A DNA stretch of 64,000 nucleotides, from positions 186,001 to 250,000 of IMG/VR virus record IMGVR_UViG_3300050821_002957; one strand, given 5' to 3'. Under the pieces are notes generated by a model, which was given only the letters and a program-made list of their open reading frames with translations, made no database searches and was not told the origin of the DNA. The translations under genes and the position numbers were made by a program. How positions within the stretch are numbered: position 1 is the stretch's first letter; the number at the start of each line of letters is the position of its first letter. This document shows, piece after piece, positions 1,712 to 61,939 of this stretch.

Positions 1712-2431
1712 TCAAATCAATCTCTGAGCAAGTAACGCCATGATTTCCTTCTCTTCCTGAAGCGAATGGCGTAACATCTCGTCGATCACGTCAACAGGCT
1801 CTTCCTGAGGTTCTGGCGGCTCTGGTGGGGTTGTTGGGGCCGGTGGTGGTTCTGGGGCCTTGGCCTGTTCCTGAACGTTCTGAGGCTCTGGCTGGCCGAA
1901 CATTGGATCGAATTCATCCAAAAGAGGATCGTAAAAATCTGTAAAAGTTGGTCGCCGGGTTTGCGGTCTTGGCCACAGTTCAAACCGATAGGTCATTGAA
2001 TTGAAAAAATGATCAAGTTCTTCGGCATCGTTCCCGGCTGGTCGAGTGCTATTTGACGGCTTGAACACATGCATACATGAAAACGCACCGAAGTAATGTG
2101 CTGTCATGTAAATTTCTTCGTTCGGTCGTGTAGGATTTCTGTAGATGCGACCGTTGCTTGAAAAGGTCTGATAGATCCAGCCATCTTGTTTCAACCGATC
2201 TTCCATTGCGACCACAGTTCGATGTAATTTGTTTTTTGGTGGTGCCGTTGTCGGTTTTGAAACAGGTGGCGACGGCGGTTTATAATCGGCCTGGGTAAAG
2301 ATCGATGGAAAGTTGTATTTCGTCGCAAGTTCAATGGCCCGAGCACGAGCAATTTCGCCTTCTTCGGGAGTGCCGGGTCTCAATGCAAGCGCTTCGAGAC
2401 TACGGATTTTTTGCTCTATGTCGTGGGCCAT
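1712..2431 (-). CDS. DUF2786-like N-terminal domain protein with Pro-rich linkers
   Basis: KIRSLEALALRPGTPEEGEIARARAIELATKY; related to 59628-60167. Confidence 0.6.
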   Translation of the reverse strand: MAHDIEQKIRSLEALALRPGTPEEGEIARARAIELATKYNFPSIFTQADYKPPSPPVSKPTTAPPKNKLHRTVVAMEDRLKQDGWIYQTFSSNGRIYRNPTRPNEEIYMTAHYFGAFSCMHVFKPSNSTRPAGNDAEELDHFFNSMTYRFELWPRPQTRRPTFTDFYDPLLDEFDPMFGQPEPQNVQEQAKAPEPPPAPTTPPEPPEPQEEPVDVIDEMLRHSLQEEKEIMALLAQRLI

Positions 2432-9197: not shown

Positions 9198-12100
9198 GTC
9201 GGAATAAACATAGCGTTTTGATTGCGCTCATAAGATGTATCAGTGTTCTTTGCACGTAGGTCACCAGTATGAGTACTGTTATTGTTAGTGATCTTTGTGG
9301 TCTGTGGTGCAATGATCTGATGTCCGGTTCCTGATTGTCCTGACGTTCTGTTCAATTCAGAATTTACCGCTGAGACTTGTGCCAATTGAACACCAGTGCT
9401 TTCAGGAGACAATTTCGGTGTATCAAGTCTAGGAGCAGCAGTATTTGTAGCTGTGGCAACCATTGCAGGCATTGACGTTGCTGTTGGTCGATCTACAGGC
9501 TTTGGACTACGTGATAAAGCTGTCACCACATTCTTTTGATTAGCTACGTTCTTGATTGTATCGCCGTAACCTCTAGCCGTGGCATACTTCGCTCCCATGT
9601 TCTCAATGAACTTGTTTACATCTCCAGTCTTTTGATATTCGGCAAAGGCAGCGGCATACGGACCCTTTGGATTAGATAGGAGTTTTGCGTGAGCTATGAA
9701 ACCTTCTTCCATAGTCTTGTAATCGGCAAACTCTCTCTTGACTGAAAATCTTTTTTTGCCTGACCAACCCATCTTCAAAGGAGAGCCATCCAACTCTGTT
9801 GCTGTAGCTGCTTCTTTCGGTTTTGATTTTTGAAATTGAGCGAATTCAGCGGGAGTCATGTCTTCCTGGGTCGTTCTAGTCTGACTCATCGTATCGCTTT
9901 TTGATTTGGTGACTCCAAATGCATTGTTACCAATCGAATGCTTACCCCAACCAGATTCTACGGCCCATTGTGCAATTGTTACTTGAGCCGGAACACCAGT
10001 TGCTTTTTCTGCATCCATTGCCATCTGTGCGATTTCTGGTGGAACTTCGCCCTGCTTGTACTTGATGTTTTTGTTCTGTGTTCCGCCACCTGTTCCAAGA
10101 ATACCGATACCTGAACCACCAGCCGCCGTGACACCAGAAGATTGTGGCTGTGGCGTTGCAGGTGTCGGTGAGGTTGGTGAAGATGTCGGCGCAACTGTTT
10201 TCGTCTGTGTTGGCGATGTTGTCGGAGTGTGAAAGCTACGAGCAGTCTTTGCCAATTCAGGTGTAGATGAAATTGGAGTAGCAGGAGGCGGATTCAATCC
10301 TCTACGTGGCGTTACAGTATTTTGTGTCTGTTGGGTCGGAGCAGGCGCAGCACTAGGAGCCGGTGCTGAAGTAGTTGGTGCAGGCTTGGCTGTTTCTGCT
10401 GTCTTCTTACCGCCGCCAAATGGATGTAGAATTGAATTGATCTTATCAGAAATCCAATCAATGACAGATTTGATAGCATCGGTTACTGACTGCAAGGCAT
10501 CTGTCAAAATTTTGGTGTTTTGTGGGCCAATAATGTTTTCGACCATCTTCTTGATCGAATCGAAAACACTGGAGAAGGCCGTACTGATACTTGCAAACGC
10601 TTTGGTGATGGTCTCCATACCAGGGATCTTCATGATCTCTTGACCAAAGTTTTCAAATGATTTTGTGAATGCCTCGATTACCTTATCCAATGCATCTTTG
10701 ATGGTATCGAGATTGAACATCGTCAAGAACCATTTGCCAAGCGCACTGAACATTCCCAGTACACCATCTTTCAGTTCTTCTATTCCTTTGTCGAATGTCT
10801 TAGGATCAGACAAATCGGACAGACCATCGATGAACTTTGACAGTCCTTCAAAAAAGTCGCCGATGATCTCAATCATCTTGCCAAGACGTTTTGCGACAAA
10901 CTCCAGGATCGGTCCCAGAACTTTGAAGATTGGTTTGGATGCCACATAGAGAGCACTCAAAATGGAACCAATTGCTTTGAAAATGCTGGCAAACGATTTT
11001 GCGCTGGTCTTTCCAAGTGTCTTTCCAATTTCTGTTTTGACACCTGCCAATCCGAGCACGAAATCAATAATTCCGAACAGACCTTCGACCACGCCGCCTA
11101 AACCACCAGCGACCCGATCCATCATCGTCAATTTCTTTTTGTCTCCAAGATACTTTTCTGCGTGCATGAATGCCGGGATGAAATCGAAGATAGCAGTGAT
11201 TGCCATAATGACTTCGCCGACAACTGGAATGAAATCTAGGAATTCAGCCATTCGACCTGCGCCACCCAAGAGTTTTGCGCCCTTGAGCATCTCGCCGCCT
11301 TCGGCCAGGAGCTTAGTACCACCCTTTGCACCTGCTTCAGCACCTTCCCCGACTGCCTTTCCAACCTCTCCCAGACCCTTTGCGCCGTCCTCTACGGCTT
11401 CGATGCCGCTTGCCGCACCCTCAACACCCCTTCCAGCCCCAGAAGCGCCCTTGCCTCGTCCAAACCAGCGCTTGAACATGCCTCCTTCTTCAGCTTCAGC
11501 CCCACCTTTAGCAGTTTTGTTGCCGAGACCCAGCCACTTTCCAATTTTGCCGCCAAACAACCGTCCGATTCCGGCTTCAATGCCAGACATGAGACCGCCG
11601 AGCAAACCGCCCTTTTTCCCACCTGATTTTTTGGCGACATCAGCAAGCAATCCACCAGCATCGCCATCGGTTGTTTCCCGACGCTTTGCGTTCGCATCCA
11701 ATTCGGATTGATCTAGTTGCTTTGCAAGCAATTTGTTGATTTCTTTTAGTTCAATCAACTGCTCTTCGTCTAATTTTGCGACTCTCGAAAGCGGACCTTC
11801 TTTGTCGCTGGTAAGAATGCTCAATTTTTTGTCTTGATCTTTTTGGACACCTTCCATGAGCTTGAGCAAACCTGCGGTATTACTTTGGCTCGCCAGTTTT
11901 TCAGGATGTAATGTCGGTTCATCCAAATCCATACGCCCGTTTTGAACAAGCTCTGGAGCCGCCGCCTTTTTCAATTGTGGTGGTGCTTCAAATTTTTCTA
12001 CGTTTGGCATCGCATGAACAGCAGCAGTCATCATTGCTTTGACTGGACTGTTGTACGGATTTTTCATGCGCTCCGCTTCTTGCTTTTCCATATGGGCTAA

Positions 12101-17373: not shown

Positions 17374-17392
17374 TATTTAGCCCATATAAATA
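17374..17392. promoter_or_regulatory. Back-to-back T4-type late promoters
   Basis: TAAATA on minus (17379-17374) and TATAAATA on plus (17385-17392). Confidence 0.8.
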
Positions 17393-58265: not shown

Positions 58266-58733
58266 TCATTGCTGTAATTTTTTGTATGCATCTCGTGCAG
58301 GCATGATACCTTCCCGACCGAGTTCTTTCATGGCTCGTGCGTTCTTATAAGATTTACCACCGTTCTTTGGGCGCTTGTAGACACCTGCGCTACCTGAGAC
58401 AGTCACTTCATCATTGTGGTCTGGTTTCATGAAATGTAGAGCTTTGAGTGCTGTCGCTTTGCCCTTTGGATGAGTAGCATCATAATGGACAAAGTGATGA
58501 AAACCGTGAATGCTGCTTACGTTCGCTCCGAATCTTGTGAAACCCTTTGCTTGAGCATCTTGAACAGAATCACCCTGTTTGCCGCCAGCTTTTATATAAT
58601 CGGGATGATGATTGGCATAGTGTTCTCCATGATGACTGAACAAATGTGCTTCACCAGACGGACTCATCCATCCTCTCATGGCTTTTTCTGGTTGCCACGA
58701 TTCGTTGATGAATTGGATAAAGGTCAGTAGCAT
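58266..58733 (-). CDS. His-rich putative internal head protein (MLLTFIQFINE)
   Basis: Capsid-targeting-like N-terminus; GWMSPSG..H motif. Confidence 0.6.
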   Translation of the reverse strand: MLLTFIQFINESWQPEKAMRGWMSPSGEAHLFSHHGEHYANHHPDYIKAGGKQGDSVQDAQAKGFTRFGANVSSIHGFHHFVHYDATHPKGKATALKALHFMKPDHNDEVTVSGSAGVYKRPKNGGKSYKNARAMKELGREGIMPARDAYKKLQQ

Positions 58734-59311
58734 TACTCTTCCGGTTTATAGTCTTCCTTCGGATGCGTTGCGTGGAAGACCGGCGCTTTCTTTGTTCCCA
58801 TGCCTTTCACACGCTCGACATGATGAAAACGCTTTGCCAATTCGTGATGAACATGATCGGCATCGATGTCATGAGCTTTGCGTGGAGACTCGGGGAAGTT
58901 GCCGGTGAATGCGCCACCTTTGTGAGTCGCCTTGTGAATTTGATCCAGCGTGTGACCCATCATCTTTTTGTTCGACTGGACGTTCAGAACATTAGATGCG
59001 TACACATGATGATACTTCTTGTCTAGTGCATGAGGATCGTGAACGCCGGGTTTCTGGTTGCTTCCAAATTCGTGTGCTGTGACGTTGTGACCTTTTTCAC
59101 GAAGGCGCTTTGCGTGCGCTGCTTCGTGGCCTGCACCGAAATCGAGAAGATGGCGACCTGCCTTGTCGTTGTGTTTAGCTTCGACAGCTTCGACGTGACG
59201 AGGCACCAGGGCCTTTGCGCCGACTGCACCAGCCGCACGAGAAGTGCTGTTGGCGATTTTCTTTTCTTCGTCGCTAAATTCGAGCAGCCAGTTGGTAAAG
59301 GACTTCATCAT
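58733..59311 (-). CDS. His-rich class I SAM-dependent methyltransferase-like protein, putative internal head protein
   Basis: LLDFGAG motif I, VTAHE motif II, YHHVYASNVLNV; late leaderless; KSFTNWLLE N-terminus. Confidence 0.7.
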   Translation of the reverse strand: MMKSFTNWLLEFSDEEKKIANSTSRAAGAVGAKALVPRHVEAVEAKHNDKAGRHLLDFGAGHEAAHAKRLREKGHNVTAHEFGSNQKPGVHDPHALDKKYHHVYASNVLNVQSNKKMMGHTLDQIHKATHKGGAFTGNFPESPRKAHDIDADHVHHELAKRFHHVERVKGMGTKKAPVFHATHPKEDYKPEE

Positions 59312-59627
59312 GCCAGTATTTAGCTGGCTTTGACTCCTACTTCCTTCAACTTACGAGGACGGCCTGCTTTGCGTCCCTTTACACGGTCGTACACACTGCG
59401 CTTGTGACTGTATCTGCGGCTACGAAAGATTTTATAGGCACGCTGAGTCAAAGTTTCGTCTTCTTTCATTTTAACACTCTCGATTGGAGTAGCGAAAATA
59501 TTGACCGGGCCGCAGCCTGTAAATTCGTATCCACAGTGTTCGCAGCCGAGACACGGTTCATTCACACAAACACCCGGCGAAAGTTTCTTTGGTTTATCGT
59601 TTGAAAGTTGAAATGCCATGACGGTAT

Positions 59628-60167
59628 CTATGTCACATGTAAATGCATGTGCTGTTGCAAATCCTTTGGTGTCTGACCAGCGAAGCGAATCATACCCGAG
59701 ATGTAATGAGTCCAGCCATCTGGTGTGATTTCGATTTGATGATCGTACATTCCAGGCCGGTCGGAAACGAACATCAAACTTTGAGGACGGCGTTCGATTC
59801 TCCATCCAAATTTGCGAAGCACGGTCATGTACTGATCGGAGACAGGTTTCGGGGCAGGTTGTGCCGCTGCTCCTGGAGATGGCTGTGGAATGGGCGCTGG
59901 ATCGGGCTGTAACGTCGCCAGATCGATTCCATGCTTCTCGGCAAGGCGTTCGGCCTGCTGACGTGCATTGATGCCTTCCGCAGCCGTTCCAGGCCGGGAA
60001 GCCAACGCCATCAAATTTCTGATTGTGGCAACGTGATCTCGTTCTGGACCTGATTTGATCTCTTCGTAATAGAGATGAATCACATTGTCGCCGATGCCTA
60101 CACCATGAATGCCATTTTCACCCAGGAACTCATCTCGAATTTTTGCTTTGGTTTCAAGAAGTGTCAT
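59628..60167 (-). CDS. DUF2786-like domain protein with C-terminal module shared with 56257-56511
   Basis: IRNLMALASRPGT..AERLAEKHGI; VLRKFGW..DH..GWTH..G.TP..L..H. Confidence 0.6.
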   Translation of the reverse strand: MTLLETKAKIRDEFLGENGIHGVGIGDNVIHLYYEEIKSGPERDHVATIRNLMALASRPGTAAEGINARQQAERLAEKHGIDLATLQPDPAPIPQPSPGAAAQPAPKPVSDQYMTVLRKFGWRIERRPQSLMFVSDRPGMYDHQIEITPDGWTHYISGMIRFAGQTPKDLQQHMHLHVT

Positions 60168-60177
60168 GTGGTGAAGA

Positions 60178-60390
60178 CTAGTGTTCAGGTTCCTCCGAAA
60201 ACACAAAGTCAGCTAGTTTGTCGGCGGTCAACAGTACATCAGAGATCCTGACTGTTGAGCCATTGGAATTCGCAGCAGTTGATTCAAGCTCCGCTGCGAG
60301 TTGCAGAATTTCAAGTTTCAAAAAGCGTGCGTCCGGTTTCTGATCGACTGCTTGGACGGTGATGTTAGTAAGGTTCTTCTCGTCACTCAT
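60178..60390 (-). CDS. Helical-hairpin protein, clip-less paralog of 60383-60712
   Basis: LKLEILQLA..VRISDVLLTADKLADFV. Confidence 0.65.
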   Translation of the reverse strand: MSDEKNLTNITVQAVDQKPDARFLKLEILQLAAELESTAANSNGSTVRISDVLLTADKLADFVFSEEPEH

Positions 60391-60712
60391 TGGTTGTGGC
60401 GGCTCCTACCATTACATAGCGATTCAGCTTTTCTGCGGTTGCCATTACCTTCTCAAGGCTGACTCGACCGGGCGAGCAAACCAATTCAGTCCCACGTCCA
60501 CCTTCTCGGCGAGGTAACCAATAGTTGCCGCCATCCTTTGTGTCTCTGAATTTTTCCATCAATGTGGCGATGTATTCTTCTGCTTTGACCTTGGGAAGAT
60601 TGCCCACGTCGATGTAGAAGATTCTTGATTGTGTGCTGCTTTCCTCAATTTGAAATGCCATCTTGAGCGTTTCGAGGCGCAGGAGTTGTTCGTGTTGCAT
60701 GTAGTCACTCAT
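60383..60712 (-). CDS. Mini protein carrying the T4-type portal (gp20) clip segment
   Basis: RIFYIDVGNLPKVKAEEY and YWLPRREGGRGTE are gp20 signature strings. Confidence 0.8.
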   Translation of the reverse strand: MSDYMQHEQLLRLETLKMAFQIEESSTQSRIFYIDVGNLPKVKAEEYIATLMEKFRDTKDGGNYWLPRREGGRGTELVCSPGRVSLEKVMATAEKLNRYVMVGAATTNE

Positions 60713-60748
60713 GCAACTATATATACGTTCAAGCTCTTGGAAACAGGA

Positions 60749-61033
60749 TCAATTCTCTTGGACTCGTATTCCTATTTCTTCGGCTTCTTGAGCACAAACC
60801 TCAAGCACCACTGCCGGATGCATCCACTGCATTAGCATCGCAGTGGTTCGGCATGTGTCGCAATTTCTAATGTGCTCTTCGATGCCCACCATCTTGATAG
60901 AATTTGTTACGACGATTTCCACTGCATCAAACGTATTGTCCTGAGCACTAGTAAATGGAAATTGCCGGAAGGGATCTTCATTAAGGAGATCCAGAATCTG
61001 TTCTTCCGTTGCATGAAAACTTAATTTGGCCAT
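60749..61033 (-). CDS. zf-HC2-like protein
   Basis: HATEEQI..IEEHIRNCDTC. Confidence 0.5.
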   Translation of the reverse strand: MAKLSFHATEEQILDLLNEDPFRQFPFTSAQDNTFDAVEIVVTNSIKMVGIEEHIRNCDTCRTTAMLMQWMHPAVVLEVCAQEAEEIGIRVQEN

Positions 61034-61297
61034 GTTCAAAGTTCTGTGGCGACCACTTTCAAAATTGAACGTAAGCGCCACTCGTCGTCGCCCTCGCACG
61101 AAATCAGGCGCAGTGAGAAATATGGAAATCCCATTTGGTTCTTCTCTTCGATCACTTCAAACTCCATACGATCAGGCCGCAGATGCTCTTCCCACGCTTT
61201 GACAATGTGAAGGCGCAACTGCGGAGCAAGATGGCTGAACGCACTATCAGGATTGTCGTATTGGCCGGGAGTGAAAACAATCACTCCCGGCTTCATT

Positions 61298-61939
61298 TCA
61301 GTTGGCTGATACGCCGTTGGTTTCTTCTTCGCCATCTTCGTCTTCTTCCGGCTCGTCGGCGAGCGTTTGCATGAAGGCTTCTTTGGCGGCGGCATCCATT
61401 CCAATCAATTGTAAAAGAGGCGTAGCAGAGACTAACGTGACGCCGTAGTAAGTGCTGTCGGGATTACGAGGTGGACGATCAGGAAGTTGTGAACCATAGC
61501 GGCCTTTCCCAGGTGCTTCTTGAAAGCCACGATAGAACTCGAATGTCTCATCATCGAGATTCACGATGTAGGCGTACTCACAGAACAAACTATCGAGTAG
61601 GAAGCCGTGAGAATCGATCATGACACCAAGCTCTTCGTCGAGCCACGGAGCGAGACTGCCCTGAGCTTCACGCAACAGGCAATACCAATCCTCAAGTTTC
61701 TGTTTGCTCACTTCGAGGTTGGCCCACTTCTCGTTTGCGGCGATTTGTTCTGCGGTCGGCGGTTCATCGCTGTCGATCAAGACGATGGCTCGTGCGACCT
61801 TTTTCATCTGTTCGATTGACGATCCGATAATGTCGTCAATCAAGTCTGATCCAAGCCCGTCTGGATAGGAGTCGAAATGGTTGTATGTAACCTTGTCGAG
61901 TCCGTCAATTCTGAATCCGAATGCGCCTCGTGTTCCCAT
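61298..61939 (-). CDS. Conserved phage protein (YxHxD(G/S)YPxGxG family)
   Basis: MGTRG..YNHFDSYPDGLG..EYAY; related to 62526-63293. Confidence 0.7.
   Translation of the reverse strand: MGTRGAFGFRIDGLDKVTYNHFDSYPDGLGSDLIDDIIGSSIEQMKKVARAIVLIDSDEPPTAEQIAANEKWANLEVSKQKLEDWYCLLREAQGSLAPWLDEELGVMIDSHGFLLDSLFCEYAYIVNLDDETFEFYRGFQEAPGKGRYGSQLPDRPPRNPDSTYYGVTLVSATPLLQLIGMDAAAKEAFMQTLADEPEEDEDGEEETNGVSAN

What the first reader, a model, noticed from the sequence alone, without database searches (positions are those of the whole stretch)
60178..60725. Stand-alone portal clip mini-protein beside a clip-less paralog: candidate portal decoy
Seen: the 109-aa ORF 60383-60712 contains RIFYIDVGNLPKVKAEEY...YWLPRREGGRGTE between two predicted helices. 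The coupled neighbour 60178-60390 has the same helices (L[RK]LExL[KQ]xA ... VxxxxVxxTA[ED]KLxxxV) joined by a short loop. The pair sits behind a late-type TATATATA, 5 nt before the ATG. Known: those strings are hallmark residues of the clip region of T4-type portal gp20 (about 500 aa), which docks the large terminase, and Avs4 STAND immune receptors sense phage portals. The variable loop between the two strings in full portals is cut down here to DTKDGGN. Inference: the frame is intact, has its own promoter and is trimmed, so this looks like a functional mimic rather than debris. It may be a decoy for portal-sensing immunity, or a terminase regulator or competitor-packaging inhibitor.
Basis: partly seen in the sequence, partly recalled or inferred. 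Interest (0 to 1): 0.88.

Follow-up and report, generated by a model that had tools for sequence, protein, structure and literature searches.

The report
Stand-alone portal clip mini-protein pair
A roughly 400-kb T4-like phage keeps, under strong purifying selection, a 109-residue copy of only the outer docking knob ("clip") of its DNA-entry portal plus a clip-less two-helix copy, most likely as a mimic that competes for a clip-binding protein, though the target is untested.

Summary
ORF 60383-60712(-) is a 109-aa protein that matches only the stem-clip-stem part of T4-type portal gp20 (Pfam Portal_T4, 50 bits against a cut-off of 22.9). The window holds no other portal piece, so it is not a broken portal gene. 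It belongs to a rare 12-member clade found only in metagenomes. The clade splits into a short form (3 members) and a long form (9 members), and all share two deletions. dN/dS against a 93%-identical relative is 0.07 for the mini-protein and 0.05 for its neighbour.

The 70-aa neighbour overlaps it by 8 nt and is a predicted helical hairpin. It aligns to the two stalk helices across the clip-sized gap (0 of 2000 shuffles; hhalign E=1.5e-4), so the "clip-less paralog" reading is moderately supported.

New context:
- The hairpin gene and a DUF2786 gene are the constant core of a patchy accessory cassette.
- One related lineage adds a truncated gp17-like terminase ATPase; another carries its degenerate remnant.
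- The long-form sister clade sits in the late structural module, usually close to neck protein gp13.

"Functional, not debris" is supported. The decoy and terminase-regulator roles remain untested. The late promoter is only a consensus match. The phage's own portal was not recovered.

The parts
60383..60712 (-). Mini-portal gene, 109 aa: stalk helix, clip (strand-helix-strand-strand), stalk helix. No wing or crown domain.
   Evidence: ORF. Pfam Portal_T4 50.4 bits and PHROG 213. Alignment to gp20 in the PDB. AF2 pLDDT 82. BFVD Foldseek top hits are portals, E down to 1.9e-7, but TM is about 0.45. dN/dS 0.07. Clade support 100/100.
60178..60390 (-). Clip-less hairpin gene, 70 aa, strongly acidic: disordered N-terminus followed by two helices. 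Probable paralog of the mini-portal stalk.
   Evidence: ORF. 81% identical in L003/L004, where the mini-portal is 62% identical. dN/dS 0.05. Gapped alignment beats 2000 of 2000 shuffles. hhalign E=1.5e-4. AF2 hairpin H21-43 and H49-65. Family of about 6 clusters in 1.84 billion representatives.
60383..60390 (-). 8-nt overlap between the mini-portal stop codon and the hairpin start codon, implying translational coupling.
   Evidence: Coordinates. The equivalent 4-nt overlaps are kept in L003, L004 and L008.
60718..60725 (-). TATATATA box 5 nt upstream of the ATG. It matches 7 of 8 positions of the T4 late consensus TATAAATA and overlaps a weak sigma-70-like -10 element (TATAGT).
   Evidence: Conserved in L008. 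Not present in L003/L004. Function not shown.
60572..60625 (-). 54-nt stretch, 86-87% identical to cyanophage g20 DNA. It encodes the near-invariant first clip motif.
   Evidence: It is the only DNA similarity between window 59600-61500 and 50,697 phage records.
59628..60167 (-). DUF2786-domain protein, likely starting at the ATG at 60167. With the hairpin gene it forms the constant core of the cassette.
   Evidence: Pfam DUF2786 at 22.4 bits, just under the 23.9 cut-off, and PHROG 421. Orthologues in L003, L004, L092 and L093 score above the cut-off. Synteny.

Best explanation
The 109-aa protein is a domesticated, free-standing copy of the portal's external docking knob (the clip) carried on a remodelled two-helix stalk. 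The 70-aa neighbour is a later copy of the stalk alone. The pair sits in a patchy accessory cassette of a roughly 400-kb T4-like phage.

I propose that it acts as a competitive mimic. It presents the clip surface without the wing and crown domains needed to build a capsid portal, and so titrates a protein that normally docks on portal clips. The target I favour is a host sensor that recognises portals or their clip ring, which would make it a self-derived decoy. The close second is the terminase of a co-infecting phage or satellite.

Shown: portal origin, trimming, purifying selection, pairing, and accessory, patchy distribution.
Inferred: that it binds clip ligands at all, what the target is, and that the hairpin packs on the stalk helices.
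For: - Only the stem-clip-stem region is present, and the near-invariant clip motifs of T4-type portals are 100% conserved across all 12 family members.
- Purifying selection is strong: dN/dS 0.07 and 0.05, p about 1e-11.
- The locus is a syntenic accessory region (NUDIX, DUF2786 and DUF4031 neighbours) whose content varies between related lineages. The mini-portal is present in window/L008 and L003/L004, and absent in L092-L094 and L095. A gp17-like ATPase-only gene is intact in L092/L093, degenerate in L003/L004 and absent in the window. Presence/absence variation of this kind is typical of conditionally useful genes rather than housekeeping ones.
- The two proteins whose fragments appear in the cassette, portal and large terminase, are the triggers of Avs1-4 (10.64898/2026.01.04.697583).
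- Portal clips are a demonstrated docking site for the TIR defence protein SpbK (PMC12847820).
- In T4 the clip is the docking site of gp17 and later gp13, and a gp17 helix-loop-helix peptide inhibits packaging in vitro, so fragment mimics can compete (PMC9958956).
Against: - No binding or expression data exist.
- The host and its defence repertoire are unknown.
- The phage's own portal was not recovered, so mimicry of self versus foreign clips cannot be compared.
- The protein diverges at an ordinary rate for this locus (dN 0.31, between its neighbours' 0.04 and 0.51), so there is no arms-race signature.
- The hairpin persists without the mini-portal in two lineages, so it is not simply a cap for it.
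- The sister long-form clade lies in a structural module, which points toward a virion or assembly role.
- The intact terminase fragment occurs in only two protein clusters.
- No PADLOC match.
Confidence: 0.4

Rival explanations
1. It is an assembly or regulatory factor for the phage's own head completion. The free clip binds the phage's own large terminase or neck protein gp13 and holds it as a chaperone, timer or anti-aggregation factor until DNA-filled heads are ready.
For: - The clip's two known ligands are gp17 and gp13 (PMC9958956).
- The long-form sister clade is in the late structural module in all five loci. It lies 0.4-8 kb upstream of gp13 in the three that reach that far (L007/L091, L096, L097). 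L001 and L098 share the flanking genes but end before any gp13.
- A late-type TATA box precedes the window gene.
- The hairpin is translationally coupled to a gp17-like ATPase in L092/L093.
Against: - The short form lies far from the structural genes in a variable accessory region.
- It is missing from two related lineages that keep the rest of the locus.
- None of 50,697 sequenced phage genomes has a second clip-like locus, so T4-like assembly does not generally need one.
Confidence: 0.25
2. It is a structural ring. Twelve copies, alone or together with the hairpin, form a small clip-and-stalk ring that is built into the neck or collar of the jumbo virion.
For: - In real portals the clip and stem contribute to inter-subunit contacts, and clip-only dodecamers can be modelled (PMC12847820).
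- The long form is flanked by tail-fibre-like and fibre-assembly proteins, with gp13 0.4-8 kb downstream in three of the five loci.
Against: - The short form is not in a structural module and is dispensable in relatives.
- The stalk helices are remodelled relative to portals.
Confidence: 0.12
3. It is non-functional debris: a leftover of a duplicated or recombined portal gene, or an artefact of frameshifted assembly.
For: Many short 'portal' ORFs in public data are such artefacts. Examples are P0042 and P0068, which keep the long loop and have garbled ends.
Against: - dN/dS is 0.07 with dS 0.59.
- The reading frame is intact in all 12 family members across 48-93% identity.
- The family shares derived deletions and is monophyletic.
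- No flanking portal remnants exist in the window.
- Identical DNA is seen in an independent locus (L089).
Confidence: 0.03
4. It is one piece of a split portal. These jumbo phages would encode the wing/crown and the stem/clip as separate genes that co-assemble.
For: No full-length portal was recovered for any genome carrying the family. The long-form N-terminus loosely resembles a portal N-terminus.
Against: - No wing- or crown-like ORF lies beside any family member.
- Short and long forms have different contexts.
- Two related lineages lack the mini-portal at this locus.
- Only about 85 kb of the roughly 400-kb genome was seen.
Confidence: 0.04

Closest known systems
T4-type portal protein gp20 (Pfam PF07230; PDB 3ja7, 6uzc)
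   Same: Homologous over the stem helix, clip and stem helix. The clip motifs are invariant and the order of secondary-structure elements is the same.
   Different: - 109 aa instead of about 520-550.
- No wing, crown or tunnel loop.
- Two internal deletions of 7 and 17 residues.
- Both stalk helices rewritten.
- Encoded in an accessory region, and dispensable in relatives.
Portal-sensing defences: Avs4, Avs11, RAZR and SpbK (10.64898/2026.01.04.697583; PMC13017515; PMC12847820)
   Same: They show that portals, and for SpbK specifically the clip ring, are immune triggers. A soluble clip is therefore a logical competitor.
   Different: These are host proteins. No phage-encoded portal mimic is described in the papers I could search. 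The known SpbK counter-defence is described as an inhibitor of the defence system, not as a trigger mimic (PMC11984713, title and abstract only).
gp17 helix-loop-helix peptide that inhibits T4 packaging in vitro (PMC9958956)
   Same: A fragment of one partner in the portal-motor interface competes with the full protein.
   Different: It is a synthetic peptide taken from the terminase side. Here the fragment is a natural, selected gene from the portal side.
Packaging-interference proteins of phage satellites, such as SaPI Ppi and related proteins (from my own knowledge, not checked here)
   Same: They are small accessory proteins that bind packaging components to redirect or block a competitor's packaging.
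   Different: They are unrelated in sequence, target the small terminase, and are not derived from the portal.
Frameshifted portal fragments in metagenome assemblies (P0042, P0068, P0086 and others)
   Same: They are short ORFs with the same Pfam hit.
   Different: They keep the full-length loop and the portal-type flanks, end in out-of-frame residues, and fall outside the mini-protein clade.

Membership tests
T4-type portal protein (Portal_T4 / gp20) | Sequence match to the family profile above the curated threshold | tested here: met
   50.4 bits against a cut-off of 22.9, but only over profile positions of about 187-300 of 433. PHROG 213 at E=1.7e-14.
T4-type portal protein (Portal_T4 / gp20) | Full four-domain architecture (wing, stem, clip, crown) at about 500 aa | tested here: not met
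   109 aa. It aligns to residues of about 225-345 of a 532-aa portal only. No other portal similarity exists in the window.
T4-type portal protein (Portal_T4 / gp20) | Portal-like three-dimensional fold | tested here: inconclusive
   The element order matches stem-clip-stem. BFVD top hits are portals, with probability 1.00 and E from 1.9e-7 to 6e-4, but TM is about 0.45 and rmsd about 10 A. No significant PDB Foldseek hit.
T4-type portal protein (Portal_T4 / gp20) | Forms the dodecameric ring at the capsid vertex | not testable with these tools
   No multimer prediction or virion data were available.
T4-type portal protein (Portal_T4 / gp20) | Single essential copy in the head-morphogenesis module | tested here: not met
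   It lies among accessory genes (NUDIX, DUF2786, DUF4031). It is absent at the syntenic locus in L092-L095.
Mini-portal clip family (defined here: window protein plus P0001-P0011) | Monophyly, shared 7- and 17-residue deletions, and truncation right after the second stalk helix | tested here: met
   Clade support 100/100, with short and long sub-clades at 97/80. Alignments. The comparison set was mostly marine-type portals.
Clip-less hairpin paralog | Collinear similarity to both stalk helices, and a hairpin fold | tested here: met
   Gapped alignment score 55, with 0 of 2000 shuffles reaching it. hhalign E=1.5e-4, but probability only 52% and the C-terminal helix only. AF2 hairpin. Adjacent and coupled genes with an identical 9-nt start. 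Support is moderate, not decisive.
T4-type late promoter | TATAAATA box positioned to drive the gene, and conserved across relatives | tested here: inconclusive
   The box matches 7 of 8 positions, 5 nt from the ATG, which would give a leaderless transcript. Two TATAWATA sites occur in 64 kb against 0.9 expected. Kept in L008 and absent in L003/L004.
Immune decoy / anti-defence protein | Binds a host sensor and blocks its activation | not testable with these tools
   The host is unknown. There is no PADLOC match, though PADLOC covers defence systems rather than anti-defence proteins.

The most novel reading that the evidence does not exclude
The mini-portal, and in related phages the ATPase-only terminase fragment, are self-derived decoys. 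The phage would express trimmed, non-assembling copies of its own most conserved structural triggers to soak up host pattern-recognition sensors that dock on portals or terminases. This would be a counter-defence principle not yet described for phages.
Probability: 0.22. Interest if true: 0.85.

Novelty: new variant of a known kind. Interest (0 to 1): 0.62.

Why it matters
Portals are among the most conserved phage proteins. They are now known triggers of several bacterial immune sensors, and their clip is the hub where the terminase and the neck dock. A naturally selected, soluble clip-only protein is a ready-made probe for those interactions.

If it is a decoy or a packaging competitor, it would add a new class of phage accessory function: mimicry built from the phage's own structural parts. 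If it is instead a neck or assembly component, it would show how jumbo T4-like phages elaborate the portal vertex by re-using one portal domain. Either way the family has 12 members, all from metagenomes, and has no counterpart in 50,697 sequenced phage genomes.

Tried and rejected
- Plain BLASTP of the two proteins gave nothing. I replaced it with a gap-tolerant alignment against shuffles and with profile comparison.
- Foldseek against the PDB gave no significant hit. BFVD gave portals, but with poor global superposition.
- The weak Pfam hit of the hairpin to G1RFP (E=0.024, below the cut-off) was dropped, and a literature search for that name found nothing.
- I tried three ways to recover the phage's own portal. 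A profile with a full-length first row was swamped by cyanophage portals. The contig is not in IMG/VR. Walking beyond the window start showed only accessory genes. Walking 10 kb past gp13 in L007 found no portal either.
- P0126, a 533-aa hit to the hairpin profile, is a DUF5907 repeat protein and not a portal.
- The N-terminal extension of the window's DUF2786 protein is not a relic of the terminase fragment.
- Short 'portal' ORFs on long contigs are frameshift artefacts.
- PADLOC found nothing for the cassette.
- Literature searches for portal decoys or fragments returned nothing relevant.
- There is no sign of accelerated evolution relative to neighbouring genes.

Full report
**What is there.** On the minus strand, ORF 60383-60712 encodes 109 aa and ORF 60178-60390 encodes 70 aa, and the two overlap by 8 nt. 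The 109-aa protein matches Pfam Portal_T4 at 50.4 bits (cut-off 22.9, E=1.9e-13). The best stretch is residues 9-58 on profile positions 187-235 of 433, and there is a second stretch. It also matches PHROG 213 portal. It aligns to T4 gp20 in solved structures, 3ja7 residues 194-240 and 6uzc residues 263-309. A tblastn search against 50,697 phage genomes hits 2,222 records, always at the annotated portal, at no more than about 40% identity, and always at one place per record. No sequenced phage therefore carries a second clip-like locus. At the DNA level only a 54-nt stretch (60572-60625), which encodes the first invariant motif, resembles anything known: cyanophage g20 at 86-87%.

**Anatomy.** Against a full-length 532-aa portal the protein covers residues of about 225-345: the first stem helix, the clip and the second stem helix. 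It has a 7-residue deletion before the first clip strand and a 17-residue deletion in the loop between the two motifs. Both stalk helices are rewritten relative to portals. AlphaFold2 with a 53-row alignment gives pLDDT 82 and the element order helix, strand, helix, strand, strand, helix. Foldseek against BFVD puts portals on top (probability 1.00, E down to 1.9e-7), but TM is about 0.45 and rmsd about 10 A. Foldseek against the PDB finds nothing significant. Homology therefore rests mainly on sequence. A tblastn of a full portal against the window finds no other portal-like piece, so this is not a broken full-length gene.

**Is it alive?** A search of 5.8 billion proteins, restricted to short lengths, found eleven true relatives:
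- P0001, 93% identical, 108 aa.
- P0002, 62% identical, 104 aa.
- Nine longer forms of 149-183 aa at 48-60% identity, with an extra N-terminal region.

All share the deletions and the invariant motifs. The other short 'portal' ORFs in that search keep the long loop and end in out-of-frame residues, so they are frameshift artefacts. In a maximum-likelihood tree the 12 sequences form one clade (100/100), with short and long forms as sister groups (97/80). The comparison set was mostly marine-type portals. Against the 93% relative (L008), dN/dS is 0.07 for the mini-protein (dS 0.59) and 0.05 for the neighbour. The excess of synonymous changes has p about 1e-11. Against the 62% relative, dS is saturated across the whole locus. 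The mini-protein's dN (0.31) is ordinary for this region, where neighbours range from 0.04 to 0.51 and the hairpin is at 0.16. The gene is constrained and shows no arms-race signature.

**The neighbour.** The 70-aa gene is kept downstream with a 4-8-nt overlap in L008, L003 and L004. It is 81% identical in L003/L004, where the mini-protein is 62% identical. BLASTP sees no similarity between the two proteins. A local alignment that allows one long gap joins mini-protein residues 2-29 and 80-100 to hairpin residues 15-42 and 43-63. It scores 55 against 24 +/- 4.6 for shuffles, with 0 of 2000 reaching it. Profile comparison matches the C-terminal helices at E=1.5e-4, probability 52%. AlphaFold2 predicts a hairpin, H21-43 and H49-65. 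Both genes start ATGAGTGAC. The 'clip-less paralog' reading is thus moderately supported. The hairpin resembles the remodelled mini-protein helices rather than portal helices, so it probably arose from the mini-protein lineage by loss of the clip. An exhaustive profile search of 1.84 billion representatives found only about six hairpin clusters, and none occurs in sequenced phages.

**Genome and locus.** The window carries gp32, gp53 and a 1430-aa glucosaminidase protein that I take to be gp5-like. Its gp32 is about 41% identical to that of cyanomyoviruses. The same DNA lies on JGI contig Ga0210388_10000015 (321 kb), and a window protein recurs on contigs of 404 and 405 kb. This is a jumbo T4-like phage known only from metagenomes. 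The locus is collinear with L003/L004, with some homologues also in L092 and L095. The shared genes include NUDIX, small ORFs, the mini-portal, the hairpin, DUF2786, a highly conserved 192-aa protein and DUF4031.

The content of the locus varies between lineages:
- The hairpin is present in all four lineages, and the DUF2786 gene in the three whose contigs extend past it (L095 ends just after the hairpin).
- The mini-portal is present in window/L008 and L003/L004, and missing in L092-L094 and L095.
- In L092/L093 the hairpin is coupled to a 266-267-aa protein that matches the T4 gp17 ATPase domain (PDB 3ezk and 2o0h, residues 135/160-314, E=1.5e-12; PHROG large terminase at 6.5e-18). Its Walker A and B motifs are intact and it has no nuclease domain.
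- L003/L004 carry a 144-aa degenerate derivative of that protein without those motifs.
- The window has none.

The intact form is very rare, with two clusters, and no sequenced phage has a second terminase-like locus.

**The long-form sister clade.** In five loci (L001, L007/L091, L096, L097, L098) the long form lies in a conserved late module. The order is a protein of roughly 730-2000 aa, three small proteins (one a coiled coil, one with tail-fibre PHROG hits), the long form, an optional lipoprotein, and a 129-aa fibre-assembly-like protein. In the three loci that extend far enough, the neck protein gp13 follows 0.4-8 kb downstream.

**Expression signals.** TATATATA at 60718-60725 lies 5 nt before the ATG. 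By T4 spacing rules (my own knowledge) transcription would start at or next to the A of the ATG, giving a leaderless message. There is no Shine-Dalgarno sequence. The only other TATAWATA site in the window is TATAAATA at 17385, 7 nt before the ATG of a structural-region gene. Two sites against 0.9 expected is not significant. The box is kept in L008 and absent where the gene overlaps its upstream neighbour. The 'own late promoter' claim is plausible but unproven.

**Mechanism.** In T4 the clip is the part of the portal that protrudes from the capsid. It binds first the gp17 motor and then gp13. The stem is a pair of antiparallel, negatively charged helices. A gp17 helix-loop-helix peptide can inhibit packaging in vitro (PMC9958956). 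Portals trigger Avs4, Avs11 and RAZR (10.64898/2026.01.04.697583; PMC13017515), and the clip ring is the docking platform for the TIR defence protein SpbK (PMC12847820).

A selected protein that keeps exactly the clip and its invariant residues, but cannot build a capsid portal, is best read as a clip mimic that competes for a clip-binding protein. Its accessory location and patchy presence, and the neighbouring fragment of the other classic trigger (the large terminase) in one lineage, tilt me toward a conditionally useful role. That role would be a decoy for portal or clip sensors, or interference with a competitor's packaging (confidence 0.4). The position of the long form in the structural module near gp13 keeps an own-assembly or neck role alive (0.25 as a factor, 0.12 as a structural ring). 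Debris (0.03) and a split portal (0.04) are unlikely. Every binding step is inference, and nothing here tests it.

**Verdict.** The 'functional, not debris' inference is supported. The specific roles remain open. No dedicated description of such a family turned up in the searchable literature, and those searches were noisy and incomplete. I rate it a new variant of a known kind: a portal-derived single-domain protein with a clip-less paralog.

Noticed in passing
L092:5378-6181 and L093:3619-4419; degenerate copy at L003:10268-10702: A stand-alone gp17-like terminase ATPase domain of 266-267 aa, with intact Walker A and B motifs and no nuclease domain. It is translationally coupled to the hairpin gene. 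The 144-aa L003/L004 version has lost both motifs. Only two protein clusters of the intact form exist in 5.8 billion proteins.
   Followed up: partly
window 17385-17392 and 60718-60725: The only two TATAWATA boxes in 64 kb both sit 5-7 nt before an ATG. By T4 late-promoter spacing the transcripts would be leaderless or nearly so, which is possibly a feature of late genes in this phage.
   Followed up: no
L001:10509-11054, L007:528-1067, L098:7634-8176: A conserved protein of about 180 aa with a signal peptide and an LVGC lipobox (a predicted lipoprotein) directly follows the long-form mini-portal in three loci. It is absent in L096 and L097.
   Followed up: partly
window 58733-59311 (-): This 192-aa histidine-rich protein is 94% identical to its L004 orthologue, although synonymous sites are saturated (pS 0.63) and its neighbours are 40-80% identical. 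It is an unusually constrained protein of unknown function.
   Followed up: partly
window 2309-2428, within ORF 1712-2431 (-): A second DUF2786-like segment lies 58 kb away from the cassette copy (tblastn E=4e-7 with the L092 protein).
   Followed up: no
whole window; L089, L099: The window is part of a 321-kb JGI contig, and its proteins recur on 404- and 405-kb contigs from other samples. This is an uncultured jumbo T4-like phage of about 400 kb. Its gp32 is only about 41% identical to that of any sequenced phage.
   Followed up: partly
L001:1618-2325 and 11060-11593; L097:2788-3552: Free-standing GIY-YIG/NUMOD3 homing-endonuclease genes are interspersed in the structural module that holds the long-form gene.
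   Followed up: no
long-form proteins P0003, P0004, P0006, P0008, P0011 (N-terminal 20-40 residues): A variable cysteine cluster (CxC or CxCC) and a conserved VFxGTTxxLL motif precede the clip module. The first residues loosely resemble a portal N-terminus, which hints at an origin by internal deletion of a full portal gene.
   Followed up: no
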